A stretch of 63,742 nucleotides of DNA, filler included, from Octopus bimaculoides (taxonomy: Eukaryota), in NCBI RefSeq assembly GCF_001194135.2. It is 6 parts of 6 records of this genome, joined end to end, with 100 filler letters (N's around TTAATTAATTAA, not from the genome) between each part and the next. Parts side by side here need not be neighbours in the genome. Positions count along the whole stretch, not along the records: positions 49,204 to 62,122 come from NC_069003.1; 5 more parts are not named here. The stretch is one strand, 5' to 3'. Shown here one piece after another: positions 57,274 through 62,122 of this stretch. Each line of letters begins with the position of its first letter. Position 1 is the first letter of the stretch. The translations under genes and the position numbers were made by a program. A model generated the notes under the pieces. It saw only the letters and a list, made by a program, of their open reading frames with translations, was not told the origin of the DNA and did no database searches.

Positions 57274-57369
57274 TGAAACGAGAGTATAGCTTTTGTTTTT
57301 CTGTACCAATTCTTTGGCTGCTTTCTCTGCAATGTGTGATGCTTTGACAGGAGCTTGTTTGTGTGGTAC
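57211..57369 (-). CDS. DHX16: DHX16 coding exon 2 (53 aa, contains poly-Asp11)
   Basis: ttttcag|GTA CCA CAC...AAG|gtaagt. VPHKQAPVKASHIAEKAAKELVQKNKSYTL matches human [30 protein letters not shown]. Phase 0-0. Confidence 0.92.
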
Positions 57370-58126
57370 CTGAAAACAGCATCGCAATCATCATTAACCA
57401 ACATCATTATAAATACGATTACAATCAGCAAGAAAATCTTCATTTTAAAGCGAATGAGAGAGCCTCCACATAGCTGCTTAAAATAGCAATGAAATGTCCC
57501 TTGAATTACACCCTGCCACAGTGCTTCTCAAATAATGTCATCATCATTATCCTTTAGCATCCGTTTTCCATGCTGGCATGGGTAAGATGGTTCCACTGGA
57601 ACTGGTAAAACAGAGAACTGCACCAGGCTCCAGTCTGTTTTGGTTTGGTTTTTATGGCTGGATGCCCACCCCCAGAGAGTACCAGATATCTTCTAGATCC
57701 TGTTGCATTTTACAATTTTTTAAGTATATTATATCCTTGGTTATACAATATTAAACTATTACTTAGCTGTTTTACCTGTTTTCTTCTTGCTTATCAGATG
57801 AAAAAAAAAAAGAGAAAGCTGCCTTTGCAATAATAGCTGAATGTCCTTCATACTATGTAGCACCTATTTTATTCTAGTCAGTTAAACCTAGTGGGGTTAT
57901 GTGAATCTAGCTCAGTAGCACAATAAAATAATTAAACCAGCAAGGTTTGAATTCATTAACATACATAAGATAATCCAGTGCCTTCAGTTTCAACCGCAAT
58001 TGCATATATAAACACACATTCTTACATATGAGTGAACTCGGGTAATAACACTCTTAGATGAAGAATGTGGTAGATTGTTTTGTGGTCTTTTCTAGATAAG
58101 TGATACAACTCTCAAATTATATAGAA

Positions 58127-58423
58127 CAGGGGTTTTCAAACTGTGGTCCGCGGACCACAGGGGGTCCGTGGAAAGCCAAGACAGGGGGTCCGTGCAGAGC
58201 CAAGCAAGTACATCCTTCTCAGTAAGTATGTATTAAAAAAATCCTGTGTGTATAATTGACAATAAACCTATTTGTTAAATACTGTTAAATAAATAAATGT
58301 AAAAGTATATGTTATTTTAAGCAAATATCTATGTATAAATTTCATAAGCGTTTATAAGGGGGTCTCTAAGGTAAAGCCTGAAATATAAAGGGGTCCACAA
58401 GTCAAAAAGTTTGAAAACCCCTG
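58127..58423. mobile_element. Complete hAT-type MITE, 297 bp, in DHX16 intron 1
   Basis: Perfect 16-bp TIRs CAGGGGTTTTCAAACT and a perfect 8-bp TSD ATATAGAA (58119-58126 and 58424-58431). Confidence 0.93.
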
Positions 58424-59499
58424 ATATAGAACACTACTATATAATGATGTGAGACAGGGGAACTCGTATTCACTCTTAGGTTAACTGAAAATTCAGATAT
58501 CACTTCTCACTGCTCTTTCTCATAACTATTCTCCCTCTCGTTTGCAAATTGTTATAAACATACGACACCAGCAGCCAACAAAGGAGCTTCCAGCAACCAA
58601 GTTCCATCGATTGTCTTAAAAGAAAGAAAGGCCACATTGGAAAATGCAATTCCAGATATATAATAAGATAGGATGGTCATGGATGGAATGCCTATGCTAA
58701 TATATCTGTTCAATCAAGTTTCACCTACAACTAGACAATGCATAGGGAAAGCCTGAAATAAAAAGTATAAGCAAACTATAGCTTGAAGATGAAATTCATG
58801 ATAGCAGCTGACACATATATTTCAATCATAAAAATATATTACGNNNNNNNNNNNNNNNNNNNNNNNNNNNNNNNNNNNNNNNNNNNNNNNNNNNNNNNNN
58901 NNNNNNNNNNNNNNNNNNNNNNNNNNNNNNNNNNNNNNNNNNNNNNNNNNNNNNNNNNNNNNNNNNNNNNNNNNNNNNNNNNNNNNNNNNNNNNNNNNNN
59001 NNNNNNNNNNNNNNNNNNNNNNNNNNNNNNNNNNNNNNNNNNNNNNNNNNNNNNNNNNNNNNNNNNNNNNNNNNNNNNNNNNNNNNNNNNNNNNNNNNNN
59101 NNNNNNNNNNNNNNNNNNNNNNNNNNNNNNNNNNNNNNNNNNNNNNNNNNNNNNNNNNNNNNNNNNNNNNNNNNNNNNNNNNNNNNNNNNNNNNNNNNNN
59201 NNNNNNNNNNNNNNNNNNNNNNNNNNNNNNNNNNNNNNNNNNNNNNNNNNNNNNNNNNNNNNNNNNNNNNNNNNNNNNNNNNNNNNNNNNNNNNNNNNNN
59301 NNNNNNNNNNNNNNNNNNNNNNNNNNNNNNNNNNNNNNNNNNNNNNNNNNNNNNNNNNNNNNNNNNNNNNNNNNNNNNNNNNNNNNNNNNNNNNNNNNNN
59401 NNNNNNNNNNNNNNNNNNNNNNNNNNNNNNNNNNNNNNNNNNNNNNNNNNNNNNNNNNNNNNNNNNNNNNNNNNNNNNNNNNNNNNTCCAACCTTAGTG

Positions 59500-59505
59500 T
59501 TTAAT
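59500..59505 (-). terminator. Possible poly(A) signal (ATTAAA) for THUMPD3
   Basis: Variant hexamer ~130 nt after the stop in a U-rich 3' region; a gap begins 13 nt further on. Confidence 0.3.
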
Positions 59506-59632
59506 GATTGTAAATGGATTGATGCCAGTGAAAAAGGAAATAGAAAGAATATAAAACTAAACACAATAAAAATTTTTTAAAATAAAGAGAAAAAGTTCAA
59601 TGTAAAAATATGTGGATTCATTAGATCCCATT

Positions 59633-61224
59633 TTACAGATCTGGAATTTGATTGTCTGGAACTGGCATTTCTTGAGGACAGTTTTCTGGTAGTGGAGAAT
59701 GCCACAGAGTTGAAACTGGAGCTCCAGAAAGCTTAGCAGATGTTCTTCGGAATAACCACACACCAGCAGCCAGCCCGCCAATGTTCACCCAAAGGTAAGA
59801 CTGTTTCTTCCAGTATTTGGCAAAATGCTGCATACACTTAAACATGCACTTTTTGTCCTGGGTAAGAAGACAGGCCCGACCAGTGTTCAGCTTGGCAACC
59901 CGTGCCATTTCATACATTACTGCAGGATATAATTTCCAGTTGTTTTTCTTTGAGCCACTTCTTTTCCCGAATGGCAAGTCAGTGATGAAAACATCTACAC
60001 TGTGGCTGGCAAGTGGCAAATGACAAGCATCCCATTTGAAAACATCGATACCAAGCTGAGGCAGCATCTTCTCTTTCCGTTGCTCATTCACAGCATTAAT
60101 GTTACCTTCAATTTTTTCCATCGCTCTATGATGAATCTCCCCACATATGTTCCAGGTTTGGGGCCAACAAACTGAGGCCTGGATTGGAATTGCTCCACTT
60201 CCACACATAGGGTCACAAACAACATCTCCATCCTGAATTTTGCAAAGTCTGAGCATGTTATAGGCAGTGGTTGCACGAAGAGTTGTCGGTCCGAAATTTG
60301 TAATTAAGCGCCGGTGTAAGCTCTCTTTGGTAAGAGCAATGCTAACAGAAACACTGTCATCAACAATTCTCAGAATAACTTCAATATTGAAATTTTTCAT
60401 ATCAACATTCCATTCAAAATAAGTTTGTATTGCACCACCAAAATTCGCTGCTGCAATCATTGANNNNNNNNNNNNNNNNNNNNNNNNNNNNNNNNNNNNN
60501 NNNNNNNNNNNNNNNNNNNNNNNNNNNNNNNNNNNNNNNNNNNNNNNNNNNNNNNNNNNNNNNNNNNNNNNNNNNNNNNNNNNNNNNNNNNNNNNNNNNN
60601 NNNNNNNNNNNNNNNNNNNNNNNNNNNNNNNNNNNNNNNNNNNNNNNNNNNNNNNNNNNNNNNNNNNNNNNNNNNNNNNNNNNNNNNNNNNNNNNNNNNN
60701 NNNNNNNNNNNNNNNNNNNNNNNNNNNNNNNNNNNNNNNNNNNNNNNNNNNNNNNNNNNNNNNNNNNNNNNNNNNNNNNNNNNNNNNNNNNNNNNNNNNN
60801 NNNNNNNNNNNNNNNNNNNNNNNNNNNNTGTAACTGGCTTCTCAGAGATTGGCAAATGAAAGGAATAAACTTCAGACCAAACCGTTAAGCCCATTCTCCA
60901 ATCAACATTTTCAACTAAATATTGAAGCTGTTTCATACATCCTTCCTCGTTACTTCCAAATCCAAAATGAAGATTTTCATGAATCAAGACTGCGCAATTG
61001 TCAACACCATTTAAAGTTAGAACCTTGGACGTGTTCTTTACGGGCAAGCGTATCACTATATGTCCGTGGCCGACACGAACCTCTTCTACACCTAATACTT
61101 CTTTGGCTTCCTCACTGGCCTCTTTTTCGAAGCCGGTACACACGGTGCATTGTACTTGACACCATTCGTCGACGTTTTTATCAGTCAACATAGAAACAGC
61201 ATGACTACTCATAGGGGTCGCCAT
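59633..61224 (-). CDS. THUMPD3: THUMP domain-containing protein 3 (tRNA guanine-N2 methyltransferase); no introns in the sequenced parts; split by N gap 60464-60828
   Basis: N-terminal part (TVCTGFEKEASEEAKEVLG...VDW) and C-terminal part (AANFGGAIQTYFEWNVDMKNFNIEV...LHRRLITNFGPTTLRATTAYNMLRL, SAM-binding DPMCGSG, TDLPFGKR, WVNIGGL) match recalled human THUMPD3. An in-frame TAG lies upstream of the ATG at 61224; TAA stop at 59633-59635. The 365-N gap is about the size of the ~105 aa missing relative to human. Confidence 0.93.
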
Positions 61225-61349
61225 TTCTACGTTTTCTGATTTAAAAAAAATTTGCTTCAGTTCCTATTTGAAGTGTGTCAGTAATTTCCCTCGTTTAATC
61301 TCTAGTGCCCCACGCTGTCAAAAACAGTGGGGACCTTTGTTCTACTCTC

Positions 61350-61367
61350 CTGAAAAGGGAGGAAAAC
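61350..61367 (-). promoter_or_regulatory. Candidate 3' splice site 125 nt upstream of the THUMPD3 ATG
   Basis: Minus strand reads GTTTTCCTCCCTTTTCAG|GAGAG. No ATG occurs between this AG and the THUMPD3 start. Confidence 0.55.
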
Positions 61368-61817
61368 TTTGCATATTGTACTCTTTGATACCTAATGCTC
61401 AGACAGGACATGTTAGCTAGAGAGGAAATTTATTCTGTAAGTTCTTGATCAATTGACTCTAAAATCCCCAAAAATGGACTTTGGCATGCAAAAAAAAAAA
61501 AAAATGCAGTGACCACAAAACAGGACCTAGCTTCAGTATCACGCAGAATCTTAGCTGATGGGAACGATAGCGGCTGGCGGCATAAGTGCTCAGTTGCGGA
61601 GGTGATATCAACAGTCATTCAATACAGTATAATAGAAGACACTTGCTCAAGATGTCGTACAGTGAGACTGAACCTGGAACCATGTGGTTGGGAAGCAAAC
61701 TTCTTACCACACAGCCACTCTTGCGTCAATATATTTCTCAAATATAGCAAGCTACATGGAAATACTTTAGAATACTATTCACACACATAGGATTGCCTAA
61801 ACACGGTACAATCTACA

Positions 61818-61863
<46 letters not shown>

Positions 61864-61976
61864 GATGGGTGTGTTTAATTTTCTGATATTGAAGAGGGAA
61901 ATTTCAAGCCCTGTGACACAGAAAAATAGAAATCAAGACCTTAAGATATCAAATCATTGCGAAAGAGATAGTTTAC

Positions 61977-62122
61977 CTTGTTCCATAATTCTGAACAGAA
62001 ACTAATGACGTTGTCATCCACATCAATTGTGTTTGTATCTTCTATCCTGTTGACAAAATCCTGCGGACTGTGCGACTTGGTGCCCAGCTCAATTAAATAA
62101 AGTGAAATATATTTATCAGATA
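61977..62122 (-). CDS. DHX16: DHX16/Prp2 coding exon 1 (3' part; start codon presumably in the gap from 62123)
   Basis: Manual translation gives SDKYISLYLIELGTKSHSPQDFVNRIEDTNTIDVDDNVISFCSELWNK, then donor AAG|GTAAAC, phase 0. Resembles the recalled human DHX16 N-terminus (SERHVAQFLIG...RDTDTLDL...LWNK). Not in the ORF track. Confidence 0.85.

What the first reader, a model, noticed from the sequence alone, without database searches (positions are those of the whole stretch)
61225..61977. Splice acceptor and AUG-free leader ahead of THUMPD3 suggest a shared promoter or first exon with DHX16
Seen: a 17-nt pyrimidine tract plus CAG (61367-61350) lies 125 nt before the THUMPD3 ATG, with no ATG in between. 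If DHX16 exon 1 (phase 0) splices here, it reads ESRTKVPTVFDSVGH and stops at TAG (61304-61302), 77 nt before the THUMPD3 start. That gives a uORF/bicistronic mRNA or a DHX16-truncating decoy isoform. Alternatively, a non-coding upstream exon could splice to either DHX16 exon 1 or this acceptor, making the two proteins mutually exclusive outputs of one promoter. Which model applies, if any, is inference.
Basis: partly seen in the sequence, partly recalled or inferred. Interest (0 to 1): 0.72.

Follow-up and report, generated by a model that had tools for sequence, protein, structure and literature searches.

The report
Intronless THUMPD3 retrocopy inside DHX16 intron
The octopus THUMPD3 gene here is an intronless, reverse-transcribed copy that landed without a promoter in the first intron of DHX16, so the splice-acceptor-like motif in front of it is host-intron DNA that could let it borrow DHX16's promoter, but no transcript data could be reached to show that it does.

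Summary
The piece is Octopus bimaculoides chromosome CM046623.1. The motif is real: G + 14 pyrimidines + CAG at 61367-61350, a 125-nt ATG-free stretch, and the ESRTKVPTVFDSVGH* read-through. The tract is 14-15 nt, not 17.

It has no introns, whereas O. vulgaris, O. sinensis, another Octopus species and Sepia have at least five, some over 30 kb. Similarity to the relatives' gene starts 5 nt before the ATG (61229) and stops sharply at 57696. It lies sense-oriented in DHX16 intron 1, 747 nt after the exon-1 donor and 326 nt before exon 2.

So the leader and acceptor are host-intron DNA, and the copy brought no promoter. Borrowing DHX16's promoter is a known route for intronic retrocopies. The motif is the best pyrimidine-run acceptor on this strand of the piece.

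No transcript evidence was reachable. DHX16's own AUG lies in exon 1, so an exon1-to-61349 mRNA would carry an 83-codon uORF before THUMPD3, a poor design for translation.

Verdict: new member of a known kind. The splicing claim is untested.

The parts
61977..62122 (-). DHX16 first coding exon, 3' 146 nt (SDKYISLYLIELGTK...SELWNK), phase 0 end. The 5' part with the ATG is lost in an assembly gap.
   Evidence: Translation. tblastn with Lottia DHX16 P0132. The gap is seen in L008. The related Octopus exon, L018/P0350, supplies the missing MSSQEIETWVSDKLHDILGI.
61230..61976 (-). Upstream part of DHX16 intron 1 (host DNA). Donor GT at 61976-61975, (CA)n(TA)n microsatellite at about 61874-61823, tRNA-derived SINE at 61734-61628, T15 run at 61504-61490.
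   Evidence: The first ~100 nt of the intron are conserved with L018 (84% identity to window 61876). The SINE has several copies in O. vulgaris L007. There is no similarity to the sequence upstream of THUMPD3 exon 1 in L001.
61350..61367 (-). Acceptor-like motif G-(Y)14-CAG followed by G. It lies in host-intron DNA, 120 nt upstream of the retrocopy's 5' boundary.
61225..61349 (-). All but the last ~5 nt is host-intron DNA. Stops occur in all three frames.
57696..61229 (-). Processed THUMPD3 retrocopy: about 5 nt of 5' UTR, an intronless ORF and about 1.9 kb of 3' UTR, ending without a poly(A) run.
   Evidence: Similarity to relatives starts at 61229 (L001) and ends at 57696 (L007, L015). Exon junctions are seamless.
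59633..61224 (-). THUMPD3 open reading frame including the stop. 132 codons are sequenced, then an assembly gap, then 276 codons. The UPF0020 methyltransferase domain is in the C-terminal part.
60464..60828 (.). Assembly gap (365 N) inside the ORF. It replaces roughly 130 codons, judged from Sepia P0129.
58844..59486 (.). Assembly gap (643 N) in the 3' UTR. It spans about 311 nt of O. vulgaris sequence.
58122..58428 (.). MITE with 21-nt terminal inverted repeats inside the 3' UTR. It is absent from O. vulgaris and from the other Octopus species.
57868..57873 (-). AATAAA, the only canonical AATAAA in the sequenced 3' UTR (an ATTAAA variant lies at 59505-59500, beside the assembly gap). A variant AATATA lies about 30 nt before the 3' boundary.
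57691..57695 (-). TAGAA directly after the 3' boundary. It repeats the TAGAA at 61229-61225 directly before the ATG, so it may be a 5-nt target-site duplication or microhomology.
57537..57667 (-). 5'-truncated SINE fragment with a (GAT)n tail, between the retrocopy's end and DHX16 exon 2.
   Evidence: Multiple copies in L007. Sequence.
57211..57369 (-). DHX16 exon 2 (VPHKQAPVK...KFVPKK). Its natural acceptor, gatgctgttttcag, is weaker in pyrimidines than the candidate at 61350.
   Evidence: Human and Lottia DHX16 continue ...LWNKVP(H/R)K.

Best explanation
SHOWN. The THUMPD3 gene in this piece is a processed, mRNA-derived, intronless retrocopy. It lies in the sense orientation in the first intron of the spliceosomal helicase gene DHX16 of Octopus bimaculoides. 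It starts about 5 nt before its ATG (61229) and ends at 57696. It therefore carries no promoter and no 5' UTR of its own. The pyrimidine tract + CAG (61367-61350) and the 125-nt ATG-free stretch are DHX16 intron sequence.

INFERRED. Any expression must come from outside the copy. The nearest source is DHX16 transcription, which reads through the copy in every pre-mRNA. A mature THUMPD3 mRNA could arise in two ways. A minor alternative splice from a DHX16 5' exon into the 61350 acceptor, with polyadenylation in the retrocopy's 3' UTR, would be a natural splice-acceptor/ORF/poly(A) 'gene trap'. Alternatively, a cryptic start site could exist in the intron.

I put the use of this particular acceptor at about 0.3. 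The ORF is intact and nearly unchanged, so the copy is either young or kept by selection.
For: 1. Organism and locus: GCA_001194135.2, CM046623.1. DHX16 and THUMPD3 are called as overlapping same-strand genes.
2. Introns present in relatives and absent here:
 - after codon 71, AAG|GTAAGG, in another Octopus species (L001)
 - a 32-kb last intron, and an acceptor before RSGSKK, in O. vulgaris
 - a 419-kb CDS span for the last 191 codons in O. sinensis
 - introns on both sides of a 726-nt exon in Sepia pharaonis, with no other exon within 10 kb
 The window joins these places seamlessly.
3. Sharp boundaries:
 - Similarity to L001 begins at 61229 and nothing upstream aligns (Smith-Waterman score 18 against a shuffle mean of 20.4). 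The same two species are 80-83% identical over more than 800 nt of 3' non-coding sequence.
 - The 3' similarity ends exactly at 57696. L007 and L015 agree with each other beyond that point and the window does not.
4. Each junction lies within one gap-free contig: DHX16 exon 1 with intron and the THUMPD3 5' end on one side, the THUMPD3 3' UTR with DHX16 exon 2 on the other. The DHX16 5' flank and intron start are colinear with a relative.
5. Constraint or youth: 4 differences in 327 coding nt against O. vulgaris (3 synonymous, 1 not), compared with about 13% divergence in the 3' UTR. There are 2 amino-acid differences in 191 against O. sinensis.
6. The acceptor motif is rare.
7. Host-exon chimeras are a documented route for intronic retrocopies (PMC4772013).
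Against: - There is no poly(A) run at the 3' boundary, and only a 5-nt TAGAA repeat as a possible target-site duplication.
- The parental multi-exon gene in O. bimaculoides could not be looked for, and none appears in the protein cluster.
- The ORF is interrupted by a 365-N assembly gap, so its integrity is unproven for about 130 codons.
- The two small contigs carrying the ORF (1294 and 977 nt) are flanked by gaps.
- For the expression step there is no transcript evidence at all.
- An exon1-to-61349 mRNA would put THUMPD3 behind an 83-codon uORF.
- No canonical branch point sits at the usual distance.
- The candidate acceptor looks stronger than the natural exon-2 acceptor. If it were used freely, that would harm DHX16.
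Confidence: 0.8

Rival explanations
1. DHX16 exon 1 splices to 61349, giving a bicistronic mRNA. The DHX16 ORF is truncated after 15 extra codons, and THUMPD3 is translated by reinitiation 77 nt downstream. Alternatively the product serves only as a DHX16-truncating decoy.
For: - Phase-0 donor, a strong Y-tract/CAG|G acceptor, an ATG-free spacer and a strong Kozak context at the THUMPD3 ATG.
- The motif is rare on this strand.
- The copy is promoter-less.
- Precedent: Taf9 in Ak6.
Against: - The DHX16 AUG lies in this exon in a related Octopus (68 codons), so the uORF would be 83 codons with internal AUGs. By established knowledge, reinitiation after long uORFs is inefficient.
- No junction evidence exists.
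- Exact look-ups of the predicted chimeric peptide found nothing. The control peptide was not found either, so this says little.
- No clear branch point.
Confidence: 0.2
2. A non-coding DHX16 5' exon, upstream of the ATG-bearing exon, splices either to the DHX16 ATG exon or to 61349. One promoter then yields DHX16 or THUMPD3 mRNAs exclusively, without a uORF.
For: In the related Octopus, an acceptor-like (Y)16-AG lies about 180 nt upstream of the DHX16 ATG (L018 about 806-822). This hints that the ATG exon may not be the first exon. The model avoids the uORF problem.
Against: This rests purely on a motif. The corresponding O. bimaculoides region is an assembly gap, and no transcript data exist.
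Confidence: 0.1
3. The retrocopy is transcribed from a cryptic start site of its own inside the intron (between 61976 and 61225). The acceptor motif is a bystander.
For: Many retrocopies use novel promoters in their flanks (PMC4772013). The region holds a SINE and A/T-rich tracts that can seed start sites. The public gene models call THUMPD3 as a stand-alone single-exon CDS.
Against: I saw no CpG-rich or recognisable core-promoter element by eye, and no tool was available to test this. The rarity of the acceptor motif would then be coincidence.
Confidence: 0.25
4. It is a young, silent processed pseudogene. The ORF is still intact only because too little time has passed, and THUMPD3 function is supplied by a parental multi-exon gene elsewhere in the genome.
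For: Near-identity to the O. vulgaris coding sequence fits a recent origin as well as it fits selection. There is no promoter. Most retrocopies are dead on arrival.
Against: A MITE has since entered the 3' UTR, unless it was already in the parental mRNA. No second O. bimaculoides THUMPD3 product appears in the protein cluster, though a gene with 400-kb introns could easily go unannotated.
Confidence: 0.3
5. THUMPD3 is natively nested in DHX16 intron 1 and lost all its introns in place, by recombination with a cDNA.
For: There is no poly(A) tail. The 3' similarity to relatives runs 1.2-1.9 kb past the stop.
Against: - The 5' flank shows no similarity to the relative's exon-1 upstream region. 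DHX16 intron and 3' UTR sequences of the same species pair are 80-84% identical.
- O. vulgaris has no DHX16 exon 2 within 8.8 kb after the THUMPD3 last exon. Here it follows within 326 nt.
- Similarity does not resume after the SINE.
Confidence: 0.05
6. Assembly artefact: cDNA-derived or chimeric contigs were placed into scaffold gaps.
For: The ORF sits on two short contigs flanked by N runs.
Against: Two independent contigs each join THUMPD3 sequence to DHX16 sequence in the expected order and orientation. The boundaries are clean and carry the same TAGAA on both sides.
Confidence: 0.04

Closest known systems
Intronic retrocopies expressed as chimeric transcripts with the host gene's upstream exons (13 human and 14 mouse cases, e.g. 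the mouse Taf9 retrocopy in Ak6; Carelli et al. 2016, PMC4772013)
   Same: An intronless mRNA-derived copy in a host intron, in the same orientation, with no promoter of its own and an acceptor-like site just upstream. Such retrocopies typically gain new 5' exons from upstream flanking sequence.
   Different: No junction or transcript has been seen here. The host's start codon lies in the donor exon, and the fusion frame closes after 15 codons. The result would be a long-uORF mRNA, not a clean 5'-UTR fusion or an in-frame chimera. This would be a first example in a cephalopod, if real.
Retrogene replacement (e.g. amphioxus SYCP1; PMC5803294)
   Same: A single-exon copy stands where relatives have a multi-exon gene, here with giant introns. 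No second THUMPD3 product from O. bimaculoides is in the protein cluster.
   Different: Loss of the parental gene was not tested. The genome outside the piece could not be searched.
L1-type processed pseudogenes
   Same: Precise removal of all introns. Similarity is limited to the mRNA. A short direct repeat flanks the insert.
   Different: There is no poly(A) tail, the flanking repeat is only 5 nt, and a 5'-truncated SINE with a (GAT)n tail lies 28 nt downstream. These features point to a non-poly(A) route, such as a LINE with a specific 3' tail or template switching, or to later erosion.
Engineered gene-trap cassettes (splice acceptor - ORF - poly(A) signal in an intron)
   Same: The layout in DHX16 intron 1 is a strong acceptor, then an ORF with a good Kozak context, then AATAAA.
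   Different: This is natural, not engineered. If it were efficient it would truncate DHX16, a spliceosomal helicase, so it should be weak or regulated.

Membership tests
Processed retrocopy (RNA-derived, intronless gene copy) | Lacks the introns of the source gene, with exon-exon junctions joined precisely | tested here: met
   Five intron positions known from O. vulgaris, another Octopus species and Sepia are continuous coding sequence here.
Processed retrocopy (RNA-derived, intronless gene copy) | Similarity to the source gene is confined to the mature mRNA, and the flanks are unrelated | tested here: met
   5' boundary at 61229 and 3' boundary at 57696. Beyond these points the relatives agree with each other but not with the window.
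Processed retrocopy (RNA-derived, intronless gene copy) | Sits at a locus different from the source gene | tested here: inconclusive
   The flanks are DHX16 intron 1. The O. vulgaris THUMPD3 3' region has no DHX16 exon within 8.8 kb. DHX16 intron 1 of O. vulgaris or O. sinensis (the empty site) could not be fetched.
Processed retrocopy (RNA-derived, intronless gene copy) | An intron-bearing parental gene in the same genome (or evidence of its loss) | not testable with these tools
   Only this piece and L008 of the O. bimaculoides genome are available. Cluster members list no second O. bimaculoides product.
L1-type (poly(A)-primed) processed pseudogene | Poly(A) tail at the 3' end | tested here: not met
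   CAGGATC is followed by tagaagatatctgg, with no A run. It is therefore not filed under this subtype.
L1-type (poly(A)-primed) processed pseudogene | Target-site duplication of about 7-20 bp | tested here: inconclusive
   Only a 5-nt TAGAA abuts both ends, and four of those five bases also match the relative's 5' UTR.
Host-gene/retrocopy chimeric transcription unit | Retrocopy in a host intron, on the same strand, downstream of host 5' exon(s) | tested here: met
Host-gene/retrocopy chimeric transcription unit | Consensus 3' splice site between the host exon and the retrocopy | tested here: met
   (Y)14-CAG|G, the best pyrimidine-run acceptor on this strand. The branch point is not evident.
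Host-gene/retrocopy chimeric transcription unit | Transcripts that join a host exon to the retrocopy | not testable with these tools
   No RNA-seq search was available. Exact look-ups of guessed chimeric peptides were negative, and the control failed too.
THUMPD3 (tRNA guanine-N2 methyltransferase THUMP3) | C-terminal UPF0020/RMKL-like methyltransferase domain, with best matches to proteins named THUMPD3 | tested here: met
   PF01170, E = 8.5e-35. Named animal THUMPD3 hits at 50-56% identity.
THUMPD3 (tRNA guanine-N2 methyltransferase THUMP3) | THUMP domain | tested here: inconclusive
   In Sepia P0129 the THUMP match (residues 250-310) is weak, and the region falls largely in the window's assembly gap.

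The most novel reading that the evidence does not exclude
The retrocopy is the only working THUMPD3 gene of O. bimaculoides. It would have replaced a parental gene spread over more than 400 kb. It is expressed from the DHX16 promoter by a regulated alternative splice into the 61350 acceptor, so that output of a tRNA methyltransferase is traded against output of a spliceosomal helicase from one promoter. This would be a natural gene trap kept by selection, made by a non-poly(A) retroposition route in a cephalopod.
Probability: 0.08. Interest if true: 0.55.

Novelty: new member of a known kind. Interest (0 to 1): 0.35.

Why it matters
The finding changes what this locus is. It is not an ordinary gene pair sharing a promoter. 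It is a compact retrocopy of a gene that has giant introns in sister species, dropped into the first intron of a spliceosomal helicase gene.

If the copy is expressed through the host's promoter, it would be a clear invertebrate example of host-gene piggy-backing by a retrogene. If the parent is gone, it would also be an example of retrogene replacement.

The lack of a poly(A) tail and the adjacent tailed SINE fragment could say something about how mRNAs are retroposed in cephalopod genomes.

For annotation, the current models are fragments caused by assembly gaps: 255 aa, and 367 aa spliced across the gap.

Tried and rejected
1. Protein searches for full-length octopus THUMPD3 and DHX16. The search for homologous proteins listed only hits up to about 1.75 times the query length, so full-length proteins were never shown.
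2. The 50%-representative search with the DHX16 N-terminus. It gave one useful octopus hit (P0350, exon 1 of another species) and no route to DHX16 intron 1 of O. vulgaris or O. sinensis. The 'empty site' test therefore could not be done. The cluster of P0350 has one member.
3. The O. sinensis loci. The X1 gene range (419 kb) was too long for DNA, and X2 is not on record.
4. Exact look-ups of five guessed peptides: DHX16 exon 1 joined to 61349, to three other acceptor-like sites, and to the unspliced intron. None was found. The unspliced control was not found either, so the N-terminal guess may be wrong and the result is uninformative.
5. The 5' UTR of cuttlefish THUMPD3 transcripts (L009, 103 nt) contains no DHX16 coding sequence. 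There is no sign of a shared first exon in decapodiforms, where the gene is multi-exon.
6. Rfam and tRNA scans of the piece gave only sub-threshold microRNA-like hits on microsatellites.
7. In-place intron loss and assembly artefact were both considered and rejected. Reasons are given under the rival explanations.
8. A literature search for octopus retrogenes found nothing on this locus.

Full report
**What is in the piece.** All features below are on the minus strand. The stretch 62122-61977 encodes SDKYISLYLIELGTK...SELWNK and ends AAG|GTAAAC. This is the N-terminal exon of DHX16. It aligns with Lottia DHX16, and further DHX16 exons follow at 57369-57211, about 55744, 54473, 53682, 52975, 51242 and 49908.

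Between the first two DHX16 exons, on the same strand, lies an ORF. It starts at ATG 61224 and stops at 59635-59633, and it is interrupted only by an assembly gap (60464-60828). Its C-terminal 276 residues carry the UPF0020 methyltransferase domain. Its best named matches are animal THUMPD3 / tRNA (guanine(6)-N2)-methyltransferase THUMP3.

The piece is Octopus bimaculoides CM046623.1 (GCA_001194135.2). The public annotation calls a 1006-aa DHX16 and, inside it, a 255-aa THUMPD3 fragment.

**The observation.**
- 61367-61350 is GTTTTCCTCCCTTTTCAG, followed by G at 61349.
- The next 125 nt contain no ATG.
- Splicing the phase-0 exon end to 61349 reads ESRTKVPTVFDSVGH, then TAG at 61304-61302, 77 nt before the ATG.
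- The tract is 14 pyrimidines (15 counting the C of CAG), not 17.

An ATG-free 125-mer is ordinary here: 9.1% of such windows lack ATG. The acceptor motif is not ordinary. It is the only run of 14 or more pyrimidines abutting AG among 651 AGs on this strand, and a first-order Markov null expects 0.08 per piece. However, real octopus intron sequence is richer in such runs than that null. By simple pyrimidine content, 11 AGs score as high or higher, and only two of them are known DHX16 acceptors. I could find no canonical branch point 18-40 nt upstream (reading).

**What the THUMPD3 gene really is.** In relatives the gene is split by introns.
- Another Octopus species (Logan assemblies of SRR11869391): exon 1 ends AAG|GTAAGG after codon 71 (L001). 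The last exon is separate (L015).
- O. vulgaris: the last two coding exons are 32 kb apart, with standard GT and AG ends (L007).
- O. sinensis: the last 191 codons span 419 kb.
- Sepia pharaonis: a 726-nt exon has introns on both sides and no other exon within 10 kb.

In the window all five of these places are continuous coding sequence. For example...TTTAAG|TGTATG... is joined exactly where O. vulgaris has its 32-kb intron.

**The boundaries.** Similarity to the relatives is confined to the mRNA.
- At the 5' end it begins at 61229, five nucleotides before the ATG. Nothing in the 294 nt upstream of the relative's exon 1 aligns with the window (local alignment score below the mean of shuffles). 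The same two species are 80-83% identical across more than 800 nt of 3' non-coding sequence, and 84% identical in the DHX16 exon 1/intron start.
- At the 3' end it runs through about 1.9 kb of 3' UTR and stops exactly after ...AAAATGCAACAGGATC (57696). Beyond that point O. vulgaris and the other Octopus still agree with each other, but the window does not.
- The window instead continues into a 5'-truncated SINE fragment with a (GAT)n tail. After 326 nt it reaches DHX16 exon 2.

**Why this is not an artefact.** Each junction lies inside one uninterrupted contig. The DHX16 5' flank on the other side of the assembly gap is colinear with the relative. This is therefore a processed retrocopy inserted into DHX16 intron 1. 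It is not an ordinary nested gene, not in-place intron loss and not an assembly artefact.

**Atypical points.** There is no poly(A) run. The only flanking repeat is a 5-nt TAGAA (61229-61225 and 57695-57691). So I do not file it as an L1-type, poly(A)-primed insertion. A LINE that uses a specific 3' tail, template switching from the neighbouring SINE RNA, or later erosion could explain this. All three are inference.

**Consequences for the finding.** The 'leader' and the acceptor motif are DHX16 intron DNA, not part of THUMPD3. Intronic, sense-oriented retrocopies are known to be expressed as chimeras with upstream host exons, and most multi-exon retrogenes gained new 5' exons from upstream flanking sequence (PMC4772013).

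Several things argue against the specific exon1-to-61349 bicistronic model.
- In the related Octopus the DHX16 AUG lies in this same exon: MSSQEIETWVSDKLHDILGI followed by SDKY..., 68 codons.
- The chimeric mRNA would therefore carry an 83-codon uORF, with internal AUGs, ahead of THUMPD3. From established knowledge, reinitiation after such long uORFs is inefficient.
- The candidate acceptor is more pyrimidine-rich than the natural exon-2 acceptor. With the AATAAA at 57873-57868, the layout amounts to a gene trap in a spliceosomal helicase gene, so efficient use should be harmful.

The alternative model, a non-coding upstream exon, cannot be judged. The O. bimaculoides sequence there is an assembly gap. 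The relative does have an acceptor-like (Y)16-AG about 180 nt upstream of the DHX16 ATG.

No transcript evidence could be reached. The only cephalopod THUMPD3 transcripts available (cuttlefish; L009-L014) come from the multi-exon gene, and their 5' UTR has no DHX16 sequence. Exact look-ups of guessed chimeric peptides were negative, but the control was negative too.

**Is the copy alive?** The sequenced ORF (132 + 276 codons) has no stop or frameshift.
- Against O. vulgaris, the last two exons differ at 4 of 327 nt (3 synonymous, 1 replacement). The adjoining 3' UTR differs by about 13%.
- Against O. sinensis there are 2 replacements in 191 residues.
- This means either purifying selection on the copy or a very recent origin. 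The data cannot separate the two.
- A MITE (58122-58428) absent from both relatives sits in the 3' UTR.
- No second O. bimaculoides THUMPD3 product is in the protein cluster. That is weak evidence, because a gene with 400-kb introns is easily missed.

**Verdict.** The motif is real and statistically unusual. The genes are correctly named. The true nature of the locus is a promoter-less THUMPD3 retrocopy in DHX16 intron 1. This makes dependence on DHX16 transcription plausible but unproven. I give about 0.3 to any use of this acceptor, 0.2 to the exon-1 bicistronic form, 0.25 to an intronic start site and 0.3 to a silent young copy. It is a new member of a known kind, of moderate-to-low general interest. 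It is worth a quick check against existing octopus RNA-seq and against DHX16 intron 1 of sister species.

Noticed in passing
O. sinensis chromosome in GCA_006345805.1; L007 10082-42403: The multi-exon THUMPD3 of O. sinensis and O. vulgaris has giant introns: 419 kb for the last 191 codons, and 32 kb for the last intron alone. It is annotated only as C-terminal fragments (191, 162 and 94 aa).
   Followed up: partly
window 58122-58428: A 307-bp MITE with 21-nt terminal inverted repeats (TAGAACAGGGGTTTTCAAACT...) sits in the retrocopy's 3' UTR. It is absent at the same place in O. vulgaris and in another Octopus species.
   Followed up: partly
window 57241-57273: DHX16 exon 2 encodes a run of 11 aspartates from a perfect (GAT)11 microsatellite. 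A (GAT)n-tailed SINE fragment lies about 260 nt upstream in the intron.
   Followed up: no
L018 806-822 and 1002-1205: In a related Octopus, an acceptor-like (Y)16-AG lies about 180 nt upstream of the DHX16 ATG. DHX16 may therefore have a non-coding first exon. The matching O. bimaculoides region is an assembly gap (L008 7208-8278).
   Followed up: no
L008 708-2620: An SSNA1-family gene lies upstream of DHX16 on the opposite strand (divergent neighbours, about 5.6 kb apart including gaps).
   Followed up: no
window 61797-61878, 56511-56655, 57027-57148: Sub-threshold Rfam hits (mir-297, mir-3149, mir-1277 and others) all fall on (CA)n/(TA)n microsatellites. They are low-complexity artefacts.
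   Followed up: yes
window 61628-61734: A tRNA-derived SINE copy in DHX16 intron 1 has several copies in the O. vulgaris locus. ARAGORN finds no intact tRNA.
   Followed up: partly
(tool behaviour): the search for homologous proteins listed no hit longer than about 1.75 times the query (231, 483 and 618 aa for queries of 132, 276 and 354 aa). This hid full-length octopus proteins.
   Followed up: partly
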